This document shows positions 14,229 through 43,879 of a stretch of 64,000 nt of DNA, in pieces. Each line of letters begins with the position of its first letter. Within the stretch, counting starts at the first letter, position 1. The notes beneath the pieces were generated by a model. It did not search any database. It saw only the letters and a list, made by a program, of their open reading frames with translations, and was not told the origin of the DNA. The stretch is from positions 186,001 to 250,000 of IMG/VR virus record IMGVR_UViG_3300017917_001123. One strand, 5' to 3'. Made by a program: the position numbers and the translations under genes.

Positions 14229-15458
14229 ATGTACGTAGAAGACTTAGTCGAACGACTTGTTGGTTATGGCAAGTACCTATTCGAACCTAATATCATTCAA
14301 GGTAACGGGTGGGAATATAACTTTGCTACATCCGTTGCTAATCAGCTATCAAACGGAAACTCACTAACCGAAAAACAAGCCACAATGGCTGTTAAGATTC
14401 TCAAGAAGTACAAACGAGAACTTGAAGCATATTTTAACAAACCAATTGACTTAGACAATCCTGTCTTTAGGAATCCGTTTAGACAACTTACAGAAGAAAA
14501 GTCAATTAGGATTGAAGAAGTCAATGGCGAAAAGCAAATCCTTGTTAGATTTTCCTACAATCAAGATATTGTTAAGCAGTTTCAAGATTATGTTAACAGT
14601 TCAGAGTGGAAGAGCTTCCGGTGGGGAAGTGTCCTAAAACAAGAAGTAGGTGCGTGGAATCACGACCTTCGAGCATGGACGTTTAAGCTCAAAGAAGACA
14701 ACATTTTCTGGTTACACAATAACTTACTCGATAAGGGCTTTATTGAAGACGAGCAATTTAAGCAGTATGTTGAAGAGATAACAAGTGTTATCGAAAAAAT
14801 GTATGACTATGCTCCTTGTGTGGTAAAAGAAGACGGAGTCTACAAATATAAAAACGTTTCTCATAAAATTCCGGACATTAATTCTGACAATGTCTTAGAA
14901 GTTTTGTTTAAGGCTAAGAGCGCAGGAGTAACAGCGTGGAGTGAGGAGGTTGATAGAGATTTAAGAGCAAATTCTTGCTCTTCGGTTACTATGGCCGTAT
15001 TAAATTCATCTAAAGCACTATACGTTGATAATTCTGCTTATACTACAGCTGAATTTAAGGATATCATTAAGCACGGTGGTCCAGTCCTTATAATCATTCC
15101 CGGCGGAAGTGAGACTCAATATACAATGGCTTGGCATAAACTAGCACAAGACTGGGGCATTCCTAGTTCAGAAATGAGTGTGATGTTTAGAATGCCAAAC
15201 GAAAGTCACGGCACCTTTAACAAATACGTTCGTGATAACTTGCTGAACAATGAAATTACTGAAAATACCAAAATTGTATTTGTTAGCACAAAGTTACCGA
15301 AGCCTCTGATCAAATCCGGTATTAGATTCAATTCAGTAATAAATCTAGGTTACTATAGAGATCTACATTTTTCCATGTCTGTGGTCTTGAATTCAACCAC
15401 CAATGTGTGTTATTATAACAACAAGCAACCATATGGGGTAACTGTTGTCAACAGCTAA
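14229..15458 (+). CDS. Hypothetical protein in recombination module
   Basis: 409 aa ORF translationally coupled to uvsW. Confidence 0.7.
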   Translation: MYVEDLVERLVGYGKYLFEPNIIQGNGWEYNFATSVANQLSNGNSLTEKQATMAVKILKKYKRELEAYFNKPIDLDNPVFRNPFRQLTEEKSIRIEEVNGEKQILVRFSYNQDIVKQFQDYVNSSEWKSFRWGSVLKQEVGAWNHDLRAWTFKLKEDNIFWLHNNLLDKGFIEDEQFKQYVEEITSVIEKMYDYAPCVVKEDGVYKYKNVSHKIPDINSDNVLEVLFKAKSAGVTAWSEEVDRDLRANSCSSVTMAVLNSSKALYVDNSAYTTAEFKDIIKHGGPVLIIIPGGSETQYTMAWHKLAQDWGIPSSEMSVMFRMPNESHGTFNKYVRDNLLNNEITENTKIVFVSTKLPKPLIKSGIRFNSVINLGYYRDLHFSMSVVLNSTTNVCYYNNKQPYGVTVVNS

Positions 15459-16896
15459 ATTAATCATTAAAGACGAGATCAATGTTAAGTTCGAAGGACT
15501 TGATTTAGATACTCGTAAAGAACTTACAAAGAAATTTAAATTCTTTGATCCAGCCGCACGATATATGCCTGCGTTTAAACTAGGGCGTTGGGACGGCTGT
15601 ACTCCATTTTTTGGTCTAGGCGGTACAACCTACGTCAGTATGCTAGACAGAGTCCTTCCACTGTTAACTCAATGGGGTTATCATATTGAAGTAGAAGATT
15701 TACGTAAACATAATCAATTACAGTTTGAAAAAGTAACAGAAGAATACTGGGGAGAAAAGTGTTGGCCCGAAGGACATAGATTTGAAGGCGAACCAATCCG
15801 ATTACGTGACGACCAAGTTGAAGTTGTAAACAAGTTTTTAGAAAATCCACAATGCCTACAAGAAGTTGCTACAGGCGCAGGTAAGACAATTATGACTGCG
15901 ACTCTAGCAAAGATTTGTGAGAAGTATGGCCGAACAATGGTTATTGTTCCGAACAAAGATCTTGTTATTCAAACCGAAGAAGATTTTCGGAACGTGGGAT
16001 TAGACGTCGGCGTTTACTTTGGCGATCGCAAAGAACTAGGAAAAACACATACAATTTGTACGTGGCAAAGTCTAAACATCTTAGATAAAAAATCGCACGA
16101 CAATAGTGAGGTTCTAACACTAGCAGAATTCATTGACGGCGTTAACGCAATTATTGTTGACGAAGTACATATGGCTAAAGCCGAAGTTCTTAAAAAATTG
16201 TTAACTGTTAACTTTGCCAATGCTCCTATTCGTTGGGGTCTAACAGGAACAGTCCCTAAAGATGATCTTAGTTTTGAAAGCATTAAGTGTGCTTTAGGTG
16301 ATGTCGTACACCGTGTGAGTGCGTACGATCTACAGCAAAAGGGTGTGCTGAGTGAATGTCACGTGAACATAGTTCAAACGCAAGAATGGAAAGAGTTCGA
16401 AAGCTATCCAGCTGAACTTAAATTCCTTGTTAGTGACGAAGATAGAATGAGCTGGGTAGCAAAATTAGTCAACGGCATTAAGGATTCGGGAAATACGTTA
16501 GTTTTAGTAGACAGAATCGACACTGGAAACTTCTTAATTAATGAGCTTCCTGATGCTGTGTTTATTAGTGGTAAAATTAAATCAACAACCCGAAAGGAAC
16601 AGTATCGTGAAGTGGCAACCGCAGATGACAAGATTATTGTGGCGACTTACGGTGTGGCCGCTGTGGGTATTAATATTCCAAGGATTTTTAATTTGGTTCT
16701 TATTGAGCCCGGAAAGAGCTTTGTCCGCGTTATACAAAGCATTGGACGAGGCATTCGAAAAGCAGAAGATAAAGACTTCGTCCAAATCTGGGATATCACA
16801 GCCAACACCAAGTACGCCAAGAGGCACCTCACTGAACGGAAGAGGTACTATAAAGAAGCAAGGTATCCGTTCACTATTGAGAAGGTAAAATATTAA
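15445..16896 (+). CDS. uvsW: SF2 helicase UvsW
   Basis: ATGAGKT, DEVH, GLTGT, QSIGRGIR motifs. Confidence 0.93.
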   Translation: MSTAKLIIKDEINVKFEGLDLDTRKELTKKFKFFDPAARYMPAFKLGRWDGCTPFFGLGGTTYVSMLDRVLPLLTQWGYHIEVEDLRKHNQLQFEKVTEEYWGEKCWPEGHRFEGEPIRLRDDQVEVVNKFLENPQCLQEVATGAGKTIMTATLAKICEKYGRTMVIVPNKDLVIQTEEDFRNVGLDVGVYFGDRKELGKTHTICTWQSLNILDKKSHDNSEVLTLAEFIDGVNAIIVDEVHMAKAEVLKKLLTVNFANAPIRWGLTGTVPKDDLSFESIKCALGDVVHRVSAYDLQQKGVLSECHVNIVQTQEWKEFESYPAELKFLVSDEDRMSWVAKLVNGIKDSGNTLVLVDRIDTGNFLINELPDAVFISGKIKSTTRKEQYREVATADDKIIVATYGVAAVGINIPRIFNLVLIEPGKSFVRVIQSIGRGIRKAEDKDFVQIWDITANTKYAKRHLTERKRYYKEARYPFTIEKVKY

Positions 16897-17399
16897 TGCA
16901 AATACTAACATTAGAAAACAAAACTTTTTATCTAAATGATCTTCCTGAAGAGATAGATGAGGATTTTCGTTACAGCGTTTTAGATAACAGCGATAACCAA
17001 AATCCCGATTACTTTTTTCTTCCTTTGATTTTTCTAGAAAGTTTTACTGGTCCTGCGGCAGTTTTGCGTGTCGGTCCTCACGAAGTTACAATGCCACTTG
17101 ATTGGTGTACTATTGTTGGAGATCCTACAGGGCCTGATATGGAAGTATTACCTCTTACTAGTTTAAATGATAGAGGATTTAAAACTTTCTGCTTCAATCC
17201 GTTAAGTAGCTTCCGCCCGGAGTTTCATGAGATTGATATTATTAATGTCTACCCAGATGTTAAATGGTACTTCCCTAAAATGAAACCAGGTCAGCTTCTA
17301 ACTACTCCGCTTCATCCTGGCGAGAAACCACTATGTGCTTATTTTGTTAAAGAAGTTAGTCGCCAAAGTGAGATTGTGAACTACTCAGCTTGTTGGTAA
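16896..17399 (+). CDS. Hypothetical beta-rich protein
   Basis: 167 aa ORF coupled to uvsW (TAATG). Confidence 0.7.
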   Translation: MQILTLENKTFYLNDLPEEIDEDFRYSVLDNSDNQNPDYFFLPLIFLESFTGPAAVLRVGPHEVTMPLDWCTIVGDPTGPDMEVLPLTSLNDRGFKTFCFNPLSSFRPEFHEIDIINVYPDVKWYFPKMKPGQLLTTPLHPGEKPLCAYFVKEVSRQSEIVNYSACW

Positions 17400-17400
17400 A

Positions 17401-17643
17401 ATGGGAAACTTAAAGCCAGGTGCTACTTACATATATGAAAGAGCTAATGGTGTGACCTATGCCCGCGAAGTTGGCCAGACTGATAGGATAGTAATTGGTT
17501 ATGACGCAGACGCTATAGTAAATCCTTACAATTCTCTTTGGAAAGATGTACTTGAAGCGTCTAAACATAACCCTGATTTACACAGAGCACTAGAACGTGT
17601 TATAATATTGTATCATCTAACTAAGGACAAAAATGGCTCTTGA
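17401..17643 (+). CDS. Hypothetical protein
   Basis: 80 aa ORF in operon. Confidence 0.65.
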   Translation: MGNLKPGATYIYERANGVTYAREVGQTDRIVIGYDADAIVNPYNSLWKDVLEASKHNPDLHRALERVIILYHLTKDKNGS

Positions 17644-18088
17644 TATTAAACGTGAATTAAATGCTGTAGACAGAAAAGTCTACGACTTTTACGACAATCT
17701 TACGGATCAAGAAAAGAAAGAGTTTAGTCCTTATATATTGATGCGCTATGTCTCAAACGTACAAGGTGATAGAGATATTCAAGAGTGGTTTGTTGAAATG
17801 ACCAATGAACTTGTGAATAAACATCACTGGGTACTGAGTAAAAATCACAAAGCACTTCTATGGAAATTGTTTGCCGGAACTGGCGCAGGCGTTAATTGCT
17901 ATCATCCGTATCTTAAAGCAGGCACTAAAGAAAAAGCAAACAAGATCGAAAAGTTGTTGGTTGAAATTTACCCAGCAATGAAACTTAGCGAAATTAAAAT
18001 GCTAGCATCTATGATGACTAAAGCAGATAAAGAAGAGCTCTTTGATAAAATGGGCTTTGATAAGAAGCAAAGAAAAGACTATGAGTAA
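17633..18088 (+). CDS. Clamp loader small subunit (T4 gp62-like)
   Basis: FSPYILMRYVS...N pattern and size match gp62-like proteins. Replication context. Confidence 0.6.
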   Translation: MALDIKRELNAVDRKVYDFYDNLTDQEKKEFSPYILMRYVSNVQGDRDIQEWFVEMTNELVNKHHWVLSKNHKALLWKLFAGTGAGVNCYHPYLKAGTKEKANKIEKLLVEIYPAMKLSEIKMLASMMTKADKEELFDKMGFDKKQRKDYE

Positions 18089-18755
18089 CTATTGTCTAAC
18101 TCCGATGACTGTAACTGAGATTAACAGTCTTTTGGGTAAAAATTTTGCTAAGACATTTCAGAAAGAAATGGATCTTATTATCGATCCCTTACGCAAATAT
18201 ATTGCTAAAGGTTATCCGCTTGCTTTAGGAAAAGAGCAATGGGAATATGTTGTAGCAGAAAGTATTCCTAAGGGAAAATGGTGCGGTGCTGGTAAGAGTA
18301 TTATTGACGTTCGTGTTGATGACAAAGGCATGGACGTAAAAGGCGTCAGTAAACAAAACAAGTCTTCGGCATCAACTGAAGCAAGTATGTATCAAACTTT
18401 TCAAGATGAAGCAAAGGCATTTTTTAATGCTAAAGATCCAGAAAAGATTTGGAATCTGTTTGTAAATGGTTGGCTAGAAAAAGTTAAGTCAGTTAAAGAA
18501 TACTACTTGATTGGTATTGTTCGTCAAAAAGAAACATTAGATTGCTCGCTGTGTGCTTTTAAAGTAACAAACACTAGTCTGCCATTTGATACAGAAAATT
18601 GTAAGTTTTCCAGCAAATCTATGAAGGTTTTGGGACTAGCAGATCCTGCTCTTTTAGAAACAAGAGTGTATATTAGTAAGACTAGACTCGAACTAAAACT
18701 TAAAAAGAAAATTTGGAACGATCCGTTGTACTCACTACCGATATATAAATTTTAA
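18081..18755 (+). CDS. Putative PD-(D/E)xK restriction-endonuclease-like protein
   Basis: E...IIDV-x6-MDVKG motif. Basic, 224 aa. Confidence 0.4.
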   Translation: MSNYCLTPMTVTEINSLLGKNFAKTFQKEMDLIIDPLRKYIAKGYPLALGKEQWEYVVAESIPKGKWCGAGKSIIDVRVDDKGMDVKGVSKQNKSSASTEASMYQTFQDEAKAFFNAKDPEKIWNLFVNGWLEKVKSVKEYYLIGIVRQKETLDCSLCAFKVTNTSLPFDTENCKFSSKSMKVLGLADPALLETRVYISKTRLELKLKKKIWNDPLYSLPIYKF

Positions 18756-18757
18756 TA

Positions 18758-19450
18758 ATGGAATTAGCAGAACAACCTTTCAAATGTGTACATTGCGGTA
18801 AGCGTTTTATGCAGGAAAAGACGCTAATGGCTCATATGTGCGAGCCGAAACGTCGAGCGATGCAGAAAAACGAAAAGCGAGTCCAGGCTGGCTATATGGC
18901 ATGGAATCGTTGGTACGAACTTAGCCAGAACCAACGTAAACCAAAGAGCTATGAAGATTTTTGTAAGAGTTCTTATTATAACGCATTCGTTAAGTTTGGC
19001 AGTTTTGTTACAAACGTAAATCCGTTGTATCCGGAGAAGTTTATCGACTTTGTTATTCGCAGTGGAGTGAAACTTGACCACTGGTGTAGGGATGAACTTT
19101 ATGAGCAGTACCTATACGAGATGCTAAAGATTGAACCCGTAGAGAACGCAGTACAAAGAACACTTACAACAATGCTCGAATGGGCAGATGCTAACAATGC
19201 CGCATGGACACACTACTTCAGATATGTTAACGCAAACAGATTAGTTCAACATATTAAAGATGGCAAAGTAAGTGCGTGGGTAATTCTTAACTGTTCTACA
19301 GGCAAAGCCGCATTAGAGTCCATGAATGACGAACAGTTAGAAATGATTCAGCCTGCTCTTGATATCCCTCACTGGTTGAGAGAATTTAGAAAGAGACACA
19401 CTGATGTAGACTTTGTAAAAGAAGTCTGTAAGGAAAGTGGAATAGAATGA
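18758..19450 (+). CDS. Zinc-finger-containing hypothetical protein
   Basis: FKCVHCGKRF...LMAHMC, a C2H2/C2HC-like N-terminus. Confidence 0.7.
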   Translation: MELAEQPFKCVHCGKRFMQEKTLMAHMCEPKRRAMQKNEKRVQAGYMAWNRWYELSQNQRKPKSYEDFCKSSYYNAFVKFGSFVTNVNPLYPEKFIDFVIRSGVKLDHWCRDELYEQYLYEMLKIEPVENAVQRTLTTMLEWADANNAAWTHYFRYVNANRLVQHIKDGKVSAWVILNCSTGKAALESMNDEQLEMIQPALDIPHWLREFRKRHTDVDFVKEVCKESGIE

Positions 19451-19791
19451 ATAAGAAATACTACCTCGACGATATTGTAAAAACGTTTGACGGTCATATA
19501 GAACGCAGTCCTATGAAATTTAGGAGAGTACAATACGATACTCGAGAATGGTGGCAAGATCCAAAATCAACAGCAACAGATGTTTTAAATTCTTACAGGT
19601 TTGAAACTATTGGCGGCGTTGCTATTCATATTCCAGACGACAAGGTACAAGACTTTGTTAGCTTTATGAGTCCTAGACTAAAGGCCAAAGAGATGGAAAT
19701 TAGAGCTAATGTACCTGCCGTACAGAAAGCATACGAACATTATCAGTTACTTTTAAAAATGTGTGGAGGGGATTACGATGCCGGATATTGA
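19447..19791 (+). CDS. Hypothetical protein
   Basis: 114 aa ORF coupled on both sides. Confidence 0.65.
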   Translation: MNKKYYLDDIVKTFDGHIERSPMKFRRVQYDTREWWQDPKSTATDVLNSYRFETIGGVAIHIPDDKVQDFVSFMSPRLKAKEMEIRANVPAVQKAYEHYQLLLKMCGGDYDAGY

Positions 19792-20347
19792 TATTGACTT
19801 CGCAGACAGAACCCGAGCACTTGAGATAATTAAGCATGTACCTGCGGCGATGGCAGGCGGCAAAAAACATAACACAGGTGTTTATTGCCACGAGATTCCT
19901 GTAAATCCACTTACAGGATTGAGTAGTATTGAATATCAAGAAGCAGAAGAAAGAGGTTATTTTAAGATAGACTTTCTTAACGTAAGCATCTATAATGACG
20001 TTAAGGATGAAGCGCATCTCAAACAACTAATGGAGGCTGAACCGCTATGGGATCTTTTGGAACAAGACGACTTCACAAATTTACTATTCCACGTAAATGG
20101 GCATGGCTCCTTGATGAGGCAGATGAAGCCCCGGAGTATCGAAGAATTGGCAATGTGTCTAGCTTTAATCCGCCCTGCGAAGAAACACCTAATTGGGAAG
20201 AGCTTTACGGAGATTGGGCAGACGATATGGGAGAAGCCGGAGAACGGTGATTACTACTTTAAGAAGGCACATGCTATTGCGTATGCCCATGTTATTGTAG
20301 TTCAGATGAATTTAATCTGCGAAGGTATTAGCTACGGACACTCTTAG
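19778..20347 (+). CDS. Minimal DNA polymerase III alpha (DnaE)-like catalytic module, 189 aa
   Basis: PDIDIDF, KHNTGV, GYFKIDFL, LALIRP, FKKAHAIAY in canonical order. GGAGG RBS before ATG 19778. Confidence 0.85.
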   Translation: MPDIDIDFADRTRALEIIKHVPAAMAGGKKHNTGVYCHEIPVNPLTGLSSIEYQEAEERGYFKIDFLNVSIYNDVKDEAHLKQLMEAEPLWDLLEQDDFTNLLFHVNGHGSLMRQMKPRSIEELAMCLALIRPAKKHLIGKSFTEIGQTIWEKPENGDYYFKKAHAIAYAHVIVVQMNLICEGISYGHS

Positions 20348-20723
20348 GGCTACGGACAAGCTGGATTGACTTGCGCTTGATTCGTTTTTCAGCAATTTCG
20401 CTCAAGTTAACGGTGGGCCCAAAAACTATCGTAACATCTTTACTGTTAAAGGTTTTGATGTAAGGCCTAAAAATTGTCATTTCTTGTTTTAGAAAAATAT
20501 TGATAGGAATTTTACGATTTGACTCCCACCACCAGCTTTCGCCGAACTCTAAAAACATGCTTTTTTCTTGTTCCGTGCGAATTACCCCAAAATCGTAGAT
20601 ACTTGTAACGTTAGAATCGTAGTTTATAATAATACCTACGTATTCGTCCTCGTTACATTTAATACAAGTGATAAACGGAAACTTTTCCTGGAATTCCTGA
20701 TCTTTTCGTGACGTCATGTACAA
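20328..20723 (-). CDS. Hypothetical protein
   Basis: ~130 aa ORF with WWWESNRKIPINIF, divergent from the next gene. Confidence 0.7.
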   Translation of the reverse strand: MYMTSRKDQEFQEKFPFITCIKCNEDEYVGIIINYDSNVTSIYDFGVIRTEQEKSMFLEFGESWWWESNRKIPINIFLKQEMTIFRPYIKTFNSKDVTIVFGPTVNLSEIAEKRIKRKSIQLVRSPKSVRS

Positions 20724-20734
20724 TAAATATGCTT

Positions 20735-21643
20735 ATGCAAAAATTACCTGTCTATTTATATACCAATCGCTATAGTGTAATATTAGATCTGGACAACATT
20801 CGAGGTGTGAACAACGTCATGTATCAACGCAACCTAATATTTCAAAAAGGACTTAAAAATAAAGTCCGTATTGAGTTTAAAAACTCCGATCAAAAGCCAG
20901 TAGACATTAGTTCTGGCACATTTTATTTCAAAATGTTTGGTCAAGGCAATGTTATGCCGTTTGCTCCGAAGCAACTCACAGTATTAGATGACGGAGTGAC
21001 CACAAGCACCAGAGGATTGGCGGTTCTTACGCTATCAGAGAGCGATACAGTAGACATTCTTCCTCAAAGTTACAATTTTGCGATTACTAGTTTAGACAGC
21101 GAAGGCAATTATAACCCAACCTATGCCAACACATATTATAATGTTCAGGGTACTGCCGAAATTCGTGACGACGTTGAGCCATATCTAACTGAAAGTGTTG
21201 AGATGAGCTCGTTCCTTGCTTACCGAGACAGTCCAACCGACCGAAATGGCCAGGTACAGCACAACTGGTGGAGCTTCCATAGCGGTAACATGGATGCCGA
21301 TCCTTCATTTAATACCAATACTGGACTACAGACACTGGCATTTTATCTATCTAACTTCAAAGGTCATATCGACGTCTACGCTACTCTTCAAAATGACCCA
21401 TCCGGTTCGGGGAACGACAATGAAGATTACGCTCTAGTCAAAACAGTGACCTATTCAACCAATACAACAGGTACCAAGTACACTAACATCACCGGAAATT
21501 ATACCCATCTTAAGGTAAAATATGTTCCAGACGCCGATGTTACTGGTACAAACTGGTACGGAGCATCCTCGGGTGGTAATCCAACACCAGGTGAGCAATA
21601 TTGGCCTAACGGAAAAGTTGACAAGATCCTGTTTAGAAGCTAA
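20735..21643 (+). CDS. Virion structural protein (BppU-like/Ig-like N-terminus)
   Basis: Beta-rich, Thr/Asn-rich. TAAATA-N5-ATG late start. Confidence 0.5.
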   Translation: MQKLPVYLYTNRYSVILDLDNIRGVNNVMYQRNLIFQKGLKNKVRIEFKNSDQKPVDISSGTFYFKMFGQGNVMPFAPKQLTVLDDGVTTSTRGLAVLTLSESDTVDILPQSYNFAITSLDSEGNYNPTYANTYYNVQGTAEIRDDVEPYLTESVEMSSFLAYRDSPTDRNGQVQHNWWSFHSGNMDADPSFNTNTGLQTLAFYLSNFKGHIDVYATLQNDPSGSGNDNEDYALVKTVTYSTNTTGTKYTNITGNYTHLKVKYVPDADVTGTNWYGASSGGNPTPGEQYWPNGKVDKILFRS

Positions 21644-21646
21644 AAT
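21618..21646 (+). promoter_or_regulatory. Sigma70-type promoter for primase (probably leaderless)
   Basis: TTGACA-17-TAAAAT, with ATG 6 nt downstream. Confidence 0.7.
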
Positions 21647-21652
21647 AACTGT

Positions 21653-22651
21653 ATGAACCTCATACAGGCAACCTTCTTACAATATTTGCCTCCGAAAAGA
21701 AAACAAACACCCAGTGGTTGGGTCAGTTTTAACGCCCCTTGTTGCGTACATAACGGAGAAAGGCAAGACAAACGCCAACGTGGCGGTGTTTTGACCAGCG
21801 GAGAAGGTGGTTTCCAATACCATTGCTTCAACTGTAACTTCAAAGCCGGTTGGCAACCAGGAAAATTACTCAGTAAGAACACAAAAAACCTCATGAGATG
21901 GTTGGGAATGCCAGACGATGAGGTTAGTAAGCTCAGCCTCGAAGCTCTTAAGAACAAAGAAGAGCTAGACAAAACACCCATACCGCTAAATTTCAGCCTT
22001 GAGCCGAAAAATTTGCCAGAAAATTGCCTTTCTATTGAAGAATGGATTCAAGCAGGTTGTGAAGAACCAGAATTTTTAGAAGTTGTCGGTTACATTTTAG
22101 ACAGAGGTATGGAGCTCGACTGGTATAACTGGATGTGGACTCCTGAAGCAGGTTATAGTGACCGCGTCATTGTGCCGTTTTATCATGAAAAAGTGGTTGT
22201 AGGGTGGACAGGACGAAAAATTCGTGACGGAAAGCCAAAATATTTGACCACAGCACAACCGGGATATGTGTTTAACATTGACGCACAGACGCATGACAGA
22301 AAATTTGTCATAGTCACGGAAGGGCAATTTGATGCTATTGCTATTGATGGTGTAGCAATTGGTCATAATGACCCAAATCAGACACAAATTGCCAGAATTA
22401 ACCAGCTAGGGAAAGAAGTTATTGTTGTCCCTGATAACGACAAGCCCGGTGCTCAAATGATTGAAAAGGCACTAGAGGCGGGATGGACGGTAAGTTTGCC
22501 AGATTGGGGTCCGGGTGTTAAAGACGTAGCAGACGCAGTAAAGAAATTTGGAAGAATTTACACACTTTTCACGATTTTACAGTATCGAGAACAAGGTGAA
22601 GTAAGTATCAAGCTAATACAAAAGAAACTAGAACATAAGAATGAAGAATAA
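21653..22651 (+). CDS. DNA primase (T4 gp61/DnaG-like)
   Basis: Zn-binding PCC...HCFNC. TOPRIM motifs TEGQFD and PDNDKPG. Confidence 0.92.
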   Translation: MNLIQATFLQYLPPKRKQTPSGWVSFNAPCCVHNGERQDKRQRGGVLTSGEGGFQYHCFNCNFKAGWQPGKLLSKNTKNLMRWLGMPDDEVSKLSLEALKNKEELDKTPIPLNFSLEPKNLPENCLSIEEWIQAGCEEPEFLEVVGYILDRGMELDWYNWMWTPEAGYSDRVIVPFYHEKVVVGWTGRKIRDGKPKYLTTAQPGYVFNIDAQTHDRKFVIVTEGQFDAIAIDGVAIGHNDPNQTQIARINQLGKEVIVVPDNDKPGAQMIEKALEAGWTVSLPDWGPGVKDVADAVKKFGRIYTLFTILQYREQGEVSIKLIQKKLEHKNEE

Positions 22652-24083
22652 TCCAACGACAAATTACAGTTACGACGTTCAAAAATTATATATTGAAATG
22701 TTCATGAGCAATGCCGAGACATTTGTGCGTTGCCAGAACATATTTGACCCCGAAAATTTCGACAGAAAGCTCCAAGAAACAGCGAGTTTTATCAACACTT
22801 ATGTAAACGAATACAAGGTCATGCCAGAGGCGGCAATCGTCAATGCCGCATGTAACACAACACTTCAACCAGCAGAACTTCCTGAGGAAAATTATGAATG
22901 GCTGATGGACGAATTTGAGCGTTTTTCACGTCACAAGGCGCTCGAAAGGGCAATTTTAAAGTCAGCAGAAATGCTAGATAAAGGCGAGTATGGTCCTGTT
23001 GAAAAAATGATCAAAGACGCTGTACAAATTTCTTTAAACAAAGATATGGGTACAGATTATTTTGAAGATCCAAGAGCACGCCTTGAAGCATTGAAGAACA
23101 GTAACGGTCAAATTTCCACAGGTTGGCCATCAGTTGACAAAAAATTGTATGGTGGATTTAACAGGGGTGAATTGAACATTTGGTGTGCGGCGTCAGGTGG
23201 CGGTAAATCTTTGTTCCTTGCTAACTTAGGAATTAACTGGGCATTAGCAGGTTTGAATGTTTTGTATCTAACATTCGAACTTAGTGAAAATTTAGTGTCA
23301 ATGCGTATGGATAGTATGTTAACAGGCGTTGCCGCACGTGAAATTTTTAAGAATCTTGAGGACGTTGAACTTAAGGTTAAAATGACAGGCAAGAAGTCAG
23401 GTAACATTCAAATCAAGTATATGCCGTCTGGCAAGAACGCAAACGACATTAGAGCATACTTGAAAGAATATCAGGTTAAAAAAGGCTTCAAGCCAGACAT
23501 TATTTTAATTGACTACTTGGACTTGATGATGCCAATGAGCGTTAAGGTTAGCCCGAGTGACTTGTTCGTTAAGGACAAATATGTATCGGAAGAACTTCGT
23601 AACCTTGCGATGGAAACACAGGCGATTGTTTGTACAGCATCACAGTTAAACCGTTCAGCAGTTGAAGAAATTGAGTTTGATCACAGCCATATTTCAGGAG
23701 GCTTGTCAAAGATTCAAACAGCGGATAACGTGATTGGTATTTTTACAAGTCGTGCTATGAAGGAACGCGGACGTTATCAAATTCAATTTATGAAGACACG
23801 TTCGTCGTCTGGTGTGGGTCAAAAAGTCGACTTAGAATTTGACGTTGATACACTGAAAATTAATGACTTAATGGAAGATGATGATACTGGTAGTGGATTT
23901 AAGAAACCAGTTGGCTCAAGCATCTATGAGTCGCTAAAGAAGACTTCAACTGTTGTTGATCAAAGCACAGGGGAAATTAAATCCGATCCTACTGAAGGAA
24001 TTAGTGTAGGCAAAATTAAGGGAGTTCAAGGCACATCTAAAGTGCGAGAATTGCTTGCTGGATTAAATCCCGAAAAGGATTAA
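22641..24083 (+). CDS. Replicative helicase (T4 gp41/DnaB-like)
   Basis: ASGGGKS, IDYLDLM, ASQLNR, KTR motifs. Confidence 0.95.
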   Translation: MKNNPTTNYSYDVQKLYIEMFMSNAETFVRCQNIFDPENFDRKLQETASFINTYVNEYKVMPEAAIVNAACNTTLQPAELPEENYEWLMDEFERFSRHKALERAILKSAEMLDKGEYGPVEKMIKDAVQISLNKDMGTDYFEDPRARLEALKNSNGQISTGWPSVDKKLYGGFNRGELNIWCAASGGGKSLFLANLGINWALAGLNVLYLTFELSENLVSMRMDSMLTGVAAREIFKNLEDVELKVKMTGKKSGNIQIKYMPSGKNANDIRAYLKEYQVKKGFKPDIILIDYLDLMMPMSVKVSPSDLFVKDKYVSEELRNLAMETQAIVCTASQLNRSAVEEIEFDHSHISGGLSKIQTADNVIGIFTSRAMKERGRYQIQFMKTRSSSGVGQKVDLEFDVDTLKINDLMEDDDTGSGFKKPVGSSIYESLKKTSTVVDQSTGEIKSDPTEGISVGKIKGVQGTSKVRELLAGLNPEKD

Positions 24084-24640
24084 AATAGATCGGCGATCTT
24101 GTTATTAACACAATGACTGATCGCCCGTTGCCATTGTTCTTCCCCGGAACCCATTAAACAAATATCTAAAGCGGCAGGTGCTGTGAGCCATCTATGATCT
24201 GGTGTCCACGGTGCTATGCCGCTTTGTTCACCTTCTAATTGGCCTGCGCTCCATGCGGCTAAGCCAACTCCTGCTCTCCAAAATTTAGGACCTTCTCCTT
24301 GACTAATTGCGGCCAAAACTGAAAGGTCCCCTGTAATTCCAATATCGTGTGTTATTTGTAAAGTACTTGAACTAGACCAGTCCATACTATGGACAACATG
24401 TACTCTAGCAGGCTCAACTGGGCCACCTAAATACACTCTTTCATTACCCCTGTACTCAATTCCTGCAGCGTTCATAACCGTGGGCATATCGAGCGTATGT
24501 GACTCTTTGTTAACAATAACACCCCATGCTCCATTGACTCCATGCTGAACTACCAAAACAATGCTTTTGGCGAAATGTGGACTGGTATTTTTAGGTTGGC
24601 TTACGAGTATTTGTCCTGATAATGAATTAAAACCGGTCAT
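24080..24640 (-). CDS. YqgE/AlgH (DUF179) family protein
   Basis: FAKSIVLV.QH...GAWGVIVN, YLGGPV, G.AAWSAGQLEGE...W motifs. Confidence 0.85.
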   Translation of the reverse strand: MTGFNSLSGQILVSQPKNTSPHFAKSIVLVVQHGVNGAWGVIVNKESHTLDMPTVMNAAGIEYRGNERVYLGGPVEPARVHVVHSMDWSSSSTLQITHDIGITGDLSVLAAISQGEGPKFWRAGVGLAAWSAGQLEGEQSGIAPWTPDHRWLTAPAALDICLMGSGEEQWQRAISHCVNNKIADLF

Positions 24641-24669
24641 GCTGATATTTAAGCAATAAATATACCTAT

Positions 24670-25359
24670 ATGTATATCTTTGAGTTTAATTCCCCAATAG
24701 AGGTCCACGATAGCCTAAACCCTGTGTTATGGGACGGCGAAGAAATTCGGCGCGAAATCCAGGTCAAACTGTTAAAAATCGCCAAAGAATTCTATAGTTT
24801 TTTGGGGATTTCGACTCGAATTGACGACGTTTTAATCACTGGCTCGCAAGCCAACTACAACTACACTAAACAGAGCGATATTGATCTTCATTTAATTGTA
24901 GATTTTAGCCAAGTAGAATGCGAAGGAGAAGTTCGCGCTTTGTTTGATGCTAAACGCAGATTATGGAAACAGAACCACGATATTACAATTAAGGGTATTC
25001 CTGTCGAATGTTATGTTGAAGATTTAAATGATCCGGCAGTTACAGCAAGTTATAGCATCATTACCCAAAGCTGGATTAAGCAACCAAATCGAGACATTAA
25101 AGACTATGACAAACAGCGTGTTGAAGAACTTGCTACAATGTGGTCAAAAGTTATCGATCAAGCAATTGAGTCTAGGGATTTAGGTGTAATCGAGGCCGTA
25201 AAAAATTCCCTAGCAATCTTTCGCAGAAAGAGTCTTGCTAAGGACGGTGAATTTGGTTCTGGAAATTTAGCGTTTAAGGCGCTGAGAAATAGTGATTATG
25301 TAGGCCGCCTAATGACAGCCTACAATGATGCTAAAGATCAATCTTTAAGCCTGTCCTAA
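24670..25359 (+). CDS. Pol-beta superfamily nucleotidyltransferase
   Basis: TGS.ANYNY...SDIDLH and VECY third-acid strand. Confidence 0.8.
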   Translation: MYIFEFNSPIEVHDSLNPVLWDGEEIRREIQVKLLKIAKEFYSFLGISTRIDDVLITGSQANYNYTKQSDIDLHLIVDFSQVECEGEVRALFDAKRRLWKQNHDITIKGIPVECYVEDLNDPAVTASYSIITQSWIKQPNRDIKDYDKQRVEELATMWSKVIDQAIESRDLGVIEAVKNSLAIFRRKSLAKDGEFGSGNLAFKALRNSDYVGRLMTAYNDAKDQSLSLS

Positions 25360-42160: not shown

Positions 42161-42859
42161 TCAACCGACAATTGGAATAACCCTACGAACGAATCCGGTA
42201 TTGTCCTTCTTAGCACGGCCCTTGGCTTTCAACCCAGCGATAACACCCTTAGGGTCCAAAAAGCGCAGGTCAGTGTCATCAGCATTGAAAACAGGGCGGC
42301 CCATGTAAGCTTCGGGCAGTTTATCAAAGACCATAGCCACGTTCATGCCCTGCGCCACAGCCTTAGCCACGTCCGCATCGTTACCGTCTGCGGCACTGAA
42401 GGTCAAGTGGTAGTTCTTAAGGTGCGACACTTTGCGGCCCAGGACCTTAGTGTAGTCATAGAACTGTACTTCCGGAAACTTCTCAATGATACCGTACTTC
42501 TCCCAGCTCAAGTCCGATGTACCATTCAAGCGGAACACGGGCGTCAAACCCAACTTCGCGGCCTGCTTGATGCCCAGTTTAATGTCTGCTTCCAAGTCCT
42601 TCATGAAAGCATCGCGGTTCTCAAAGAAGTACTTGGTCTTGCGGATGCGAGCCTGCTGGATCACGTTGGTGTTCTCACCTTTGCGGAACATGCCGCCACG
42701 ACCGGCAGTATTAAGGCAAGCGGCTGTACAACCTGCGGTGCGCTTAGGGCATACTTCTTTGCCCGACAAGTCAGCAGGAGCAAGGTGTAGGATGTAGCTC
42801 AGGTAACCCAGCTTCGTACCCTTCTGGATCTTAGGATTTGCAGTGCTCAATAGTTTCAT
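42161..42859 (-). CDS. GP88-family radical-SAM-like protein
   Basis: CPKRTAGCTAAC (Cx6Cx3C), FRLNGTSD, QFYDYTK, YHLTFS motifs. Confidence 0.75.
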   Translation of the reverse strand: MKLLSTANPKIQKGTKLGYLSYILHLAPADLSGKEVCPKRTAGCTAACLNTAGRGGMFRKGENTNVIQQARIRKTKYFFENRDAFMKDLEADIKLGIKQAAKLGLTPVFRLNGTSDLSWEKYGIIEKFPEVQFYDYTKVLGRKVSHLKNYHLTFSAADGNDADVAKAVAQGMNVAMVFDKLPEAYMGRPVFNADDTDLRFLDPKGVIAGLKAKGRAKKDNTGFVRRVIPIVG

Positions 42860-42930
42860 CTCTTGCTCCTTATTAATGTTTCTAGTCTCTAGTATAACAC
42901 CGGTTTTACCACTTGTCAACCAATACCCGT

Positions 42931-43269
42931 TCAATCTCCACGGGTATCTGTATTCAGCATGGGCTTCAACTTGCGGCGGAGTTCCACTTCCAAGTCGTGT
43001 CCTGCCTGCTTGCCACGTGCCGTGCCCAGAACGCGAACACCTATTTCAGTCTTGTCGTTGAGCTCACGCAGGGCCACGCAAAGGAGCCAATTCTTGCTTT
43101 CAGTCTTTGCGCGATAGAAATGCTTGGCTGCACGTGTCCGTGCGCTCTTAAGAGCTGTGGACTCTGTTTTGGCTGTGACACCAACATAAGTCATGCCGTT
43201 GACCGTAAGCTCATAGACTACATGAGTACGATCTGCACGCTTTTTACGGGGACGCTTTTCTAAGTTCAT
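42931..43269 (-). CDS. GIY-YIG-like protein (leaderless start)
   Basis: VVYEL..NGMTYVGVT...R...E...LN. ATG 6 nt after the -10. Confidence 0.6.
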   Translation of the reverse strand: MNLEKRPRKKRADRTHVVYELTVNGMTYVGVTAKTESTALKSARTRAAKHFYRAKTESKNWLLCVALRELNDKTEIGVRVLGTARGKQAGHDLEVELRRKLKPMLNTDTRGD

Positions 43270-43802: not shown

Positions 43803-43879
43803 TGGTGGGCCCAACAGGACTCGAACCTGTGACCAAGCGATTATGAGTCGCCTGCTCTAACCAACTGAGCTATAGGCCC
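43803..43879 (-). tRNA. tRNA-Ile2 (CAT, lysidine type)
   Basis: GGGCCTATAGCTCAGTTGGTTAGAGCAGGCGACTCATAATCGCTTGGTCACAGGTTCGAGTCCTGTTGGGCCCACCA. Cloverleaf with encoded CCA. Anticodon arm matches E. coli ileX as recalled. Confidence 0.9.

What the first reader, a model, noticed from the sequence alone, without database searches (positions are those of the whole stretch)
19778..20347. 189-aa mini-DnaE retaining the three catalytic aspartates
Seen: PDIDIDF, KH..G, K.DFL, LALIRP and F.K.HA..Y in order, with the thumb and much of the fingers deleted and no PHP, clamp-binding or OB domains. RBS and coupling are intact. It lies within a T4-like replisome module. Established: DnaE is normally >1000 aa and T4-type phages replicate with a family B polymerase. 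Inference: not a decayed fragment but a minimal polymerase or nucleotidyltransferase (primer extension, repair), possibly completed by the neighbouring Zn-finger and 114-aa proteins. Similar modules may already be catalogued in jumbo phages.
Basis: partly seen in the sequence, partly recalled or inferred. Interest (0 to 1): 0.6.

Follow-up and report, generated by a model that had tools for sequence, protein, structure and literature searches.

The report
Half of a split mini-DnaE
The 189-residue gene is real, intact and conserved, but it is only the C-terminal half of a two-gene, stripped-down DNA polymerase III alpha that was already described in 2021 for this group of jumbo phages; its N-terminal half lies 163 kb away in the same genome.

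Summary
The ORF at window 19778-20347 (+) and all the quoted motifs are there. It belongs to phrog_11778 (E 2.5e-67). Its predicted fold matches only C-family polymerases: E. coli alpha 403-781, Z 8.3, against 3.6 for the best unrelated chain. It is under strong purifying selection (dN/dS about 0.13), and at least 8000 homologues of about 189-193 aa exist.

It is not a self-sufficient mini-polymerase. The N-terminal palm piece with the GRGS nucleotide-binding motif is a separate 177-aa gene at genome 42472-43005, 163 kb upstream. That gene ends where this one begins on the DnaE sequence.

- The two halves co-occur in 95 and 96 cultured jumbo phages, always far apart.
- They are predicted to bind each other: ipSAE 0.90, best control 0.00.
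- The genome also has an 889-aa family B polymerase.
- It has no PHP, HhH or further finger pieces.

Iyer et al. 2021 (PMC7824862) described exactly this arrangement as the split minimal Pol III of group 2.2 jumbo phages. The 114-aa neighbour is not a conserved partner. The Zn-finger neighbour is conserved in position, but a link to the polymerase is untested. Polymerase activity is still only inferred.

The parts
19778..20347 (+). C-terminal half of the split minimal Pol III alpha (189 aa). It carries the metal-binding Asp D3, D5 and D65 (plus D7), K63, and the residual finger motifs IRPAK and FKKAHA.
19765..19769 (+). GGAGG ribosome-binding site, 8 nt upstream of the ATG
   Evidence: read directly from the sequence
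19447..19791 (+). 114-aa ORF that overlaps the start by 14 nt. It fills a variable slot and is not a conserved partner.
   Evidence: No PHROG or Pfam hit. Homologues in 10 of 83 loci, and the slot length varies from 0 to 3.7 kb.
18758..19450 (+). 230-aa protein with a C2H2-like zinc-finger N-terminus (phrog_11058). It is a conserved upstream neighbour of unknown function.
20328..20723 (-). 131-aa convergent gene (phrog_11637) that overlaps the 3' end by 20 nt. It is conserved downstream on the opposite strand in 83 of 83 loci.
15445..16896 (+). UvsW-like superfamily 2 helicase, which opens the conserved block
   Evidence: Pfam ResIII, DEAD and Helicase_C. 49-51% identical to the helicases of Atu_ph07, Paride and RaK2.
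21653..22651 (+). DNA primase (gp61/DnaG-like)
   Evidence: 31-36% identical to the annotated primases of RaK2 and Paride. No Pfam hit at E 0.001.
22641..24083 (+). DnaB-like replicative helicase
   Evidence: PF03796 at E 1.1e-18,
20708..21643 (+). 311-aa protein similar to a virion structural protein, conserved between the convergent gene and the primase
   Evidence: phrog_14467 at E 8e-10,

Best explanation
The gene encodes the C-terminal half of the split, minimal DNA polymerase III alpha that is typical of group 2.2 (RaK2, PA5oct and Atu_ph07-like) jumbo phages.

Shown here:
- A separate 177-aa gene lies at genome 42472-43005, 162.8 kb upstream on the same strand. It supplies the N-terminal palm segment with the invariant G141-R142-G143-S144 motif.
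- That gene ends at ...NEFLK, which corresponds to E. coli alpha about residue 392. The window gene starts at MPDIDIDF, which corresponds to about residue 399.
- Together the two halves cover E. coli alpha 281-781, with the thumb and most of the fingers removed.
- There is no intein, so any association between them must be non-covalent.

Inferred:
- The two chains form a heterodimer that rebuilds a Pol-beta-like nucleotidyltransferase palm.
- The N half holds the triphosphate of the incoming nucleotide. The C half supplies the metal-binding Asp D3, D5 and D65, K63, and the finger residues R132, K162/K163 and H165.
- Without a thumb, clamp-binding motif, OB or PHP domain, the enzyme would be distributive and would not proofread.
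- It would be an auxiliary polymerase working beside the phage's family B replicase. Candidate roles are primer extension, gap filling or repair. This fits the C half's fixed place in the block that runs from the UvsW-like helicase to the primase and DnaB-like helicase.
For: Family and fold:
- C half: phrog_11778 at E 2.5e-67. N half: phrog_11127 at E 3.5e-46 and PF07733 at E 3.3e-8, above the cut-off, model positions 16-96.
- Profile against PDB: the N half aligns to E. coli alpha 320-392. The C half aligns to Mtb DnaE1 413-425, 567-663 and 773-788.
- VIA-align: N half residues 82-176 match E. coli 281-398 (Z 6.0, rmsd 3.2, 93 aligned). C half residues 4-186 match 403-781 (Z 8.3, rmsd 5.4, 181 aligned; best unrelated chain 3.6).

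Co-occurrence of the halves:
- tblastn finds the C half in 96 cultured phage records and the N half in 95, in the same genera.
- Both are present, 34-182 kb apart, in Atu_ph07, Paride and RaK2.
- Both are present in all 4 IMG/VR records that are at least 71% complete.

Binding:
- Complex prediction gave ipSAE 0.90 (runs 0.90, 0.90, 0.91) against a best control of 0.00.
- In calibration this mark was reached by 58 of 80 solved complexes and 2 of 110 mismatched pairs. These counts hold only roughly, because my own alignments were used.
- The runs agree in at least 96% of contacts, and the partner's pLDDT is at least 89.
- N-half W138/G139 touch C-half residues 6-8.

Selection: dN/dS median 0.13.

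Genome: an 889-aa PolB with an exonuclease domain is present. PHP, HHH_6 and further finger matches are absent.

Literature: Iyer et al. 2021 describe the same split minimal Pol III beside a PolB in group 2.2 phages.
Against: - No biochemical or genetic evidence for activity exists, here or in any paper found.
- The complex score may partly reflect the model's memory of contacts within single-chain DnaE structures.
- The N half folded alone only reaches pLDDT 68.5, and Foldseek gave no clear match for it.
- Foldseek E-values for the C half are weak (0.055), although the top 12 hits are all Pol III alpha.
- The genome record is 93% complete, so the absence of other DnaE domains is not absolute.
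- The residue that aligns with E. coli R390 is Glu in the N half.
Confidence: 0.75

Rival explanations
1. The heterodimer is real but is not a templated DNA polymerase. It could be a non-templated nucleotidyltransferase, for instance one that adds tails or makes a nucleotide signal. It could also be a non-catalytic replisome or regulatory subunit that kept the fold.
For: The Pol-beta-like nucleotidyltransferase fold serves many non-polymerase enzymes (established knowledge). The thumb and most of the DNA-binding fingers are gone. No activity has been published.
Against: All three metal-binding Asp, K63, the GRGS motif and the finger motifs that DnaE keeps near the incoming nucleotide are invariant. 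The C half always lies in the helicase-primase block.
Confidence: 0.17
2. The 189-aa protein is a self-contained minimal polymerase, possibly completed by the adjacent Zn-finger and 114-aa proteins.
For: The Zn-finger gene lies upstream in 83 of 83 loci, directly adjacent in 14 of them and within 20 nt in 20. It occurs in the same phage genera.
Against: The protein lacks the GRGS-bearing palm half, which is encoded elsewhere and co-occurs with it. The 114-aa gene is present in only 10 of 83 loci. Any core gene of this clade would show the same distribution as the Zn-finger gene.
Confidence: 0.04
3. It is a conventional split DnaE, with PHP, thumb, full fingers, clamp-binding and OB parts all encoded as further pieces elsewhere in the genome.
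For: One further piece, the N-terminal palm, is indeed encoded elsewhere.
Against: HMM scans of the whole 331.6-kb record at E up to 10 find no PHP, no HHH_6 and no second finger piece, while the control genomes ring. Iyer et al. report the same absence.
Confidence: 0.02
4. It is a neutrally decaying remnant of a captured bacterial dnaE.
For: Its size is one sixth of DnaE, and Pfam scores fall below the gathering cut-offs.
Against: dN/dS is about 0.13 with synonymous sites near saturation. Length is conserved among the relatives checked: 189-206 aa in the 120 listed database hits and 188-193 aa in 81 of 83 recovered genes. 34 columns are invariant, and synteny is conserved from Agrobacterium to Klebsiella phages.
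Confidence: 0.01

Closest known systems
Split minimal DNA polymerase III alpha of group 2.2 jumbo phages (Iyer, Anantharaman, Krishnan, Burroughs and Aravind, Viruses 2021, PMC7824862). PHROG families phrog_11127 (N half) and phrog_11778 (C half).
   Same: Two standalone proteins are encoded by distant genes: an N-terminal NTP-binding part and a C-terminal part that binds Mg2+ and template. A family B polymerase is present beside them, no other DnaE domains are present, and the replisome gene block is the same.
   Different: Nothing essential. This copy comes from an uncultivated pond phage. It is 56% (C half) and 35% (N half) identical to Atu_ph07, and 50% and 49% identical to PA5oct-like phages.
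Bacterial replicative C-family polymerase DnaE (E. coli Pol III alpha, 2HNH; T. aquaticus 2HPI; M. tuberculosis DnaE1 5LEW)
   Same: The Pol-beta-like palm has the GRGS motif, the PD.D.DF strand, the K.DFL strand, and the finger motifs .RP.. and F.K.HA..Y in the same order. The folds superpose on residues 281-781.
   Different: It consists of two polypeptides totalling 366 aa instead of one of more than 1100. It has no PHP, thumb, distal fingers, clamp-binding motif, HhH, OB or tau-binding domain. The N half carries a family-specific extension of about 80 residues at its N-terminus.
Intein-split DnaE of cyanobacteria (for example Npu and Ssp DnaE)
   Same: A C-family polymerase catalytic subunit is encoded by two distant genes.
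   Different: The cyanobacterial halves carry split-intein sequences and are ligated into a full-length enzyme. Here the N half ends 5 residues after FLK and the C half starts at MPD, so there is no room for intein parts, and the break lies at a different place (inside the palm).
Full-length DnaE/PolC-like polymerases of group 3.2 jumbo phages (phage G, c-st)
   Same: They are phage-encoded C-family polymerases.
   Different: Those are host-like, full-length enzymes with a PHP domain and act as the main replicase. This one is minimal, split and accompanied by a PolB.

Membership tests
Split minimal Pol III alpha of group 2.2 jumbo phages (Iyer et al. 2021) | Standalone C-terminal protein of about 190 aa with the Mg2+-binding Asp residues and the template-binding subdomain | tested here: met
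   phrog_11778 at E 2.5e-67. D3, D5, D7 and D65 are invariant. The fold matches alpha 403-781 at Z 8.3.
Split minimal Pol III alpha of group 2.2 jumbo phages (Iyer et al. 2021) | Separate N-terminal NTP-binding protein encoded by a distantly located gene | tested here: met
   A 177-aa ORF at genome 42472-43005, 162.8 kb from the C half. phrog_11127 at E 3.5e-46, PF07733 at E 3.3e-8, GRGS invariant.
Split minimal Pol III alpha of group 2.2 jumbo phages (Iyer et al. 2021) | [quoted passage not shown] | tested here: met
   An 889-aa ORF at genome 63480-66149 with DNA_pol_B (E 4.1e-38) and DNA_pol_B_exo1 (E 4.7e-19).
Split minimal Pol III alpha of group 2.2 jumbo phages (Iyer et al. 2021) | No other DnaE domains in the genome | tested here: met
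   PF02811 (PHP) and PF14579 (HHH_6) give no match at E up to 10. PF17657 matches only the finding itself. The record is 93% complete.
Split minimal Pol III alpha of group 2.2 jumbo phages (Iyer et al. 2021) | The two halves reconstitute one enzyme | tested here: inconclusive
   The prediction supports binding: ipSAE 0.90 against a best control of 0.00. In calibration the mark was reached by 58 of 80 solved complexes and 2 of 110 mismatched pairs. At least 96% of contacts agree and the partner's pLDDT is at least 89. This is a model, not a measurement.
Bacterial DnaE (C-family replicative polymerase) | Pol-beta-like palm with three catalytic Asp residues and a GS motif | tested here: met
   Present, but divided over two polypeptides.
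Bacterial DnaE (C-family replicative polymerase) | N-terminal PHP domain | tested here: not met
   No PF02811 match anywhere in the genome, while the controls ring in 14 of 14.
Bacterial DnaE (C-family replicative polymerase) | Thumb and complete fingers domains | tested here: not met
   About 380 DnaE residues are spanned by 183 here. About 100 residues are missing between the PD.D.DF and K.DFL blocks, and about 87 between the .RP.. and F.K.HA blocks.
Bacterial DnaE (C-family replicative polymerase) | Clamp-binding motif, HhH and OB domains C-terminal to the fingers | tested here: not met
   The protein ends at about alpha residue 781, and the genome has no HHH_6 match. The OB family was not scanned separately.
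Bacterial DnaE (C-family replicative polymerase) | Templated DNA polymerase activity | not testable with these tools
   This needs a primer-extension assay with both halves.
Intein-split DnaE | Split-intein sequences at the break | tested here: not met
   The N half stops 5 residues after FLK and the C half starts at MPDIDIDF.

The most novel reading that the evidence does not exclude
The two-piece, 366-aa enzyme is an active C-family DNA polymerase, the smallest known. It acts as a dedicated primer-extension or gap-filling polymerase coupled to the neighbouring primase and helicases. The always-adjacent Zn-finger protein (phrog_11058) or the convergent 131-aa protein would replace the missing thumb or DNA-binding parts. 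It could then stand as a model of an ancestral Pol III, as Iyer et al. proposed.
Probability: 0.2. Interest if true: 0.7.

Novelty: new member of a known kind. Interest (0 to 1): 0.3.

Why it matters
The arrangement itself is published, so this copy adds only a new member from an uncultivated pond phage. The family is still worth attention for three reasons.

- It is very large: at least 8000 database clusters.
- It is strictly conserved.
- It is biochemically untouched.

If the heterodimer is active, it would define the minimal catalytic core of C-family polymerases. It would also show that a phage with a T4-type family B replisome uses a second polymerase of bacterial type.

This analysis adds several things to the published description:
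- the exact break point, between E. coli alpha about 392 and 399;
- a controlled complex prediction;
- selection data;
- the invariant gene order Zn-finger gene, variable slot, C half, convergent gene.

Tried and rejected
- Megablast of window 15000-25000 against cultured phages found no match, so the phage has no close cultured relative.
- The Pfam scan of the C half gave only sub-threshold hits. PHROGs settled the family.
- Foldseek on the N half alone gave no clear match. The VIA second look recovered DnaE at Z 6.0-6.2.
- hhalign of the N-half profile against the C-half profile gave probability 0.15, so the halves are not paralogues.
- The ESM Atlas feature searches returned only the proteins' own viral clusters.
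- For RNA evidence, the only full holder is a pond metagenome DNA run and there are no RNA runs.
- No later biochemical work was found in the literature. The PA5oct omics paper does not mention the gene, and the PaBG paper concerns other Pol III subunits.
- Intein-mediated joining is rejected from the termini of the two proteins.
- The 114-aa ORF as a partner is rejected because its slot is variable.

Full report
**1. Observation**

The window is bases 186001-250000 of a 331,570-bp IMG/VR virus record, estimated 93% complete. The only run that holds it in full is a pond metagenome.

The ORF at 19778-20347 (+) encodes 189 aa.
- PDIDIDF at residues 2-8
- KHNTG at 30-34
- KIDFL at 63-67
- LALIRP at 128-133
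- FKKAHAIAY at 161-169

A GGAGG sits 8 nt before the ATG. The upstream 114-aa ORF overlaps the start by 14 nt. The family alignment supports the ATG at 19778 rather than the GTG at 19763, because M1 is invariant in 65 of 65 relatives.

**2. Identity of the protein**

Pfam gives only sub-threshold hits: PF17657 at E 0.0018 and PF07733 at E 0.22. PHROGs places the protein in phrog_11778, labelled 'DNA polymerase', at E 2.5e-67 over 180 of 189 residues.

A profile of 68 family members hits M. tuberculosis DnaE1 in four collinear blocks:

| Profile positions | DnaE1 residues |
|---|---|
| 1-13 | 413-425 (the same MPDIDIDF octamer) |
| 54-137 | 567-663 |
| 160-175 | 773-788 |

A fourth block is weak.

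The AlphaFold2 model has mean pLDDT 80.5. Foldseek's first 12 hits are all Pol III alpha, though the E-values are weak at 0.055 or worse. VIA-align also gives 12 C-family polymerases at the top. The best is 2hnh at Z 8.3, rmsd 5.4, 181 residues aligned, model 4-186 against chain 403-781. The score then drops to Z 3.6 for the first unrelated chain.

By motif, and by the 2hqa alignment (model residue 3 to chain residue 401), the residues map as follows:
- D3 and D5 correspond to E. coli D401 and D403.
- K63 and D65 correspond to K553 and D555. The E. coli numbers for this pair are from memory of the DnaE literature.

About 380 DnaE residues are covered by 183 residues here. The thumb is missing (about 100 residues between the first two blocks). 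About 87 residues of the fingers are also missing, as is everything beyond about residue 781.

**3. It is only half an enzyme**

A PF07733 scan of the whole genome finds a second, stronger match at 42754-43203 (E 7.6e-10). It lies in a 177-aa ORF at genome 42472-43005 on the + strand (L001:1219-1752).

The evidence that this is the N-terminal half:
- It belongs to phrog_11127 (E 3.5e-46).
- It passes the Pfam cut-off for PF07733 (E 3.3e-8, model positions 16-96).
- Its family profile aligns to E. coli alpha 320-392 and ends at the FERFL motif.
- Its model matches E. coli alpha 281-398 over residues 82-176 (Z 6.0, rmsd 3.2, 93 aligned) and Mtb DnaE1 309-418 (Z 6.2). The next unrelated chain scores 2.6.
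- W138, G139, G141, R142, G143 and S144 are invariant or nearly so. These form the GS motif of the Pol-beta-like nucleotidyltransferase fold.

The N half stops 5 residues after ...NEFLK, and the window gene starts at MPDIDIDF. The break therefore falls inside the palm, between alpha residues about 392 and 399. Neither terminus leaves room for intein parts.

The first 80 or so residues of the N half have no counterpart in DnaE models. The two families are not paralogues of each other (hhalign probability 0.15).

**4. The halves travel together but apart**

- tblastn against 50,697 phage records finds the C half in 96 records and the N half in 95. One weak N-half hit (H100) is a gene annotated DNA polymerase III alpha subunit in a 77-kb Clostridium phage.
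- The genus tallies are the same: Escherichia 34 and 34, Pseudomonas 11 and 11, Erwinia 8 and 8, Salmonella 8 and 8, Klebsiella 11 and 10.
- All the C-half records listed are jumbo phages of the RaK2, 121Q, GAP32, CBB, PA5oct and Atu_ph07 kind.
- In Atu_ph07, Paride and RaK2 the halves lie 182, 43 and 34 kb apart.
- In IMG/VR, all four records that are at least 71% complete hold both halves, 59-186 kb apart. The five records that are 23-70% complete hold only one.
- None of the 17 N-half loci has a C half within 2 kb, and the reverse holds within 4 kb.

**5. Predicted association**

Complex prediction was run with the N half as chain 1 and the C half as the partner. It scored ipSAE 0.90, 0.90 and 0.91, against 0.00 for the best of three controls.

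- In the tool's calibration this mark was reached by 58 of 80 solved complexes and 2 of 110 mismatched pairs. The counts hold only roughly, because my own alignments were used.
- The runs agree in at least 96% of their contacts, and the partner's pLDDT is at least 89.
- N-half W138 and G139 touch C-half residues 6-8, so the GS loop lies on the strand that carries the catalytic Asp residues. The N-terminal extension, including the invariant W77, packs on C-half residues 37-40 and 59-61.

The model supports binding but does not show it. It may also draw on memory of single-chain DnaE structures.

**6. Selection**

The word search returned 8000 significant relatives, which is its cap. The 120 listed are 189-206 aa, nearly all 189-196.

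For 82 IMG/VR and cultured homologues, dN/dS against the window gene is 0.05-0.14, with synonymous sites near saturation. Over 405 pairs with dS between 0.05 and 1.5, the median is 0.13 and the maximum 0.27. The N half is more divergent, at 35-59% identity, but its median ratio is 0.10 over 13 usable pairs. Decay is excluded.

**7. Rest of the genome**

- An 889-aa family B polymerase with its exonuclease domain lies at 63480-66149.
- PHP (PF02811) and HHH_6 (PF14579) give no match at E up to 10, although the control genomes ring. The finger model PF17657 matches only the finding itself.
- One DnaQ-like exonuclease gene lies at 14639-15127.

So this is not a conventional split DnaE whose other domains are simply elsewhere.

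**8. Neighbourhood**

The gene order is:
1. UvsW-like helicase
2. 167-aa protein
3. 151-aa protein
4. Zn-finger 230-aa protein
5. variable slot
6. C half
7. convergent 131-aa gene
8. virion-protein-like gene
9. primase
10. DnaB-like helicase

The helicases, the 167-, 151- and 230-aa genes, the C half, the convergent gene and the primase keep this order in Atu_ph07, Paride and RaK2; the virion-protein-like gene matched by sequence only in Atu_ph07. In 83 loci the Zn-finger gene is always upstream and the convergent gene is always downstream on the other strand.

The slot between the Zn-finger gene and the C half varies in length: under 20 nt in 20 loci, about 160-215 nt in 26, about 310-390 nt in 19, and up to 3.7 kb in the rest. 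The window's 114-aa ORF has homologues in only 10 of the 83 loci. It has no PHROG or Pfam hit. It is therefore not a conserved partner.

The Zn-finger protein belongs to phrog_11058 and has a weak C2H2 match at residues 8-28. It occurs in the same phage genera, in 93 records. Any core gene of this clade would show that pattern, so its link to the polymerase stays open.

**9. Mechanism**

Shown: homology, the break point, co-occurrence, selection and the gene context.

Inferred:
- The halves form a non-covalent heterodimer that rebuilds the palm.
- The N half binds the triphosphate of the incoming nucleotide.
- The C half binds the two metal ions and contributes the residual fingers.
- Lacking a thumb, clamp contact and proofreading domain, the enzyme would be distributive.
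- It would serve beside the family B replicase in primer extension, gap filling or repair.

Iyer et al. suggested synthesis of one strand, or repair.

**10. What is known**

[quoted passage not shown] It accompanies a family B polymerase, and no other Pol III domains are present.

Every feature of that description was tested here and met. Several GenBank records, and JGI, already label these genes DNA polymerase III alpha. No later biochemical study was found in the held library.

**11. Verdict**

It is wrong on self-sufficiency and on which protein completes it.

This is a new member of a known kind. Interest is modest, and it rests on the fact that the family's activity has never been measured.

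Noticed in passing
window 19447-19791, and the same slot in L014-L093: The space between the Zn-finger gene and the C half is a hot spot for small, unrelated inserted genes. The gap is under 20 nt in 20 loci, about 160-215 nt in 26, about 310-390 nt in 19, and up to 3.7 kb in the rest.
   Followed up: partly
window 20328-20723 (-): A 131-aa gene (phrog_11637, function unknown) converges on the C half and overlaps its last 20 nt. It is in this position on the opposite strand in 83 of 83 loci and in 89 cultured phage records.
   Followed up: partly
own genome C1:14639-15127 (L112): A standalone DnaQ/RNase T-like 3'-5' exonuclease gene (PF00929, E 5.5e-14). It might proofread for the mini Pol III, or it might be unrelated to it.
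   Followed up: no
PHROG profiles hit: The N half matches the C-terminal end of profiles about 460 positions long (phrog_13169 at 335-410 of 463; phrog_7513 at 342-444 of 461). The C half's FKKAHA block matches positions 365-398 of 823 (phrog_12219) and 459-494 of 782 (phrog_11165). This suggests that other phage DnaE genes are split at about the same point but keep the PHP domain and the full C-terminal part.
   Followed up: no
window 24080-24640 (-): An AlgH-like (DUF179, PF02622, E 2.9e-30) protein is encoded on the opposite strand, right after the DnaB-like helicase gene. This is an unusual passenger in a phage replication block.
   Followed up: no
L001:1953-2333 and L001:2563-3057 (own genome about 43.2-44.3 kb): The N half does not lie among replication genes. 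Its downstream neighbours are a Cpn10/GroES-like protein (E 2.5e-8) and a cytidylyltransferase-like protein (E 1.6e-11).
   Followed up: no
window 43803-43879 (-): A single tRNA-Met (CAT) gene.
   Followed up: no
N half residues 1-80 (L001:1219-1458): The family-specific N-terminal extension has no DnaE counterpart. In the complex model it packs against C-half residues 37-45 and 59-62, with the invariant W77 at the interface.
   Followed up: partly
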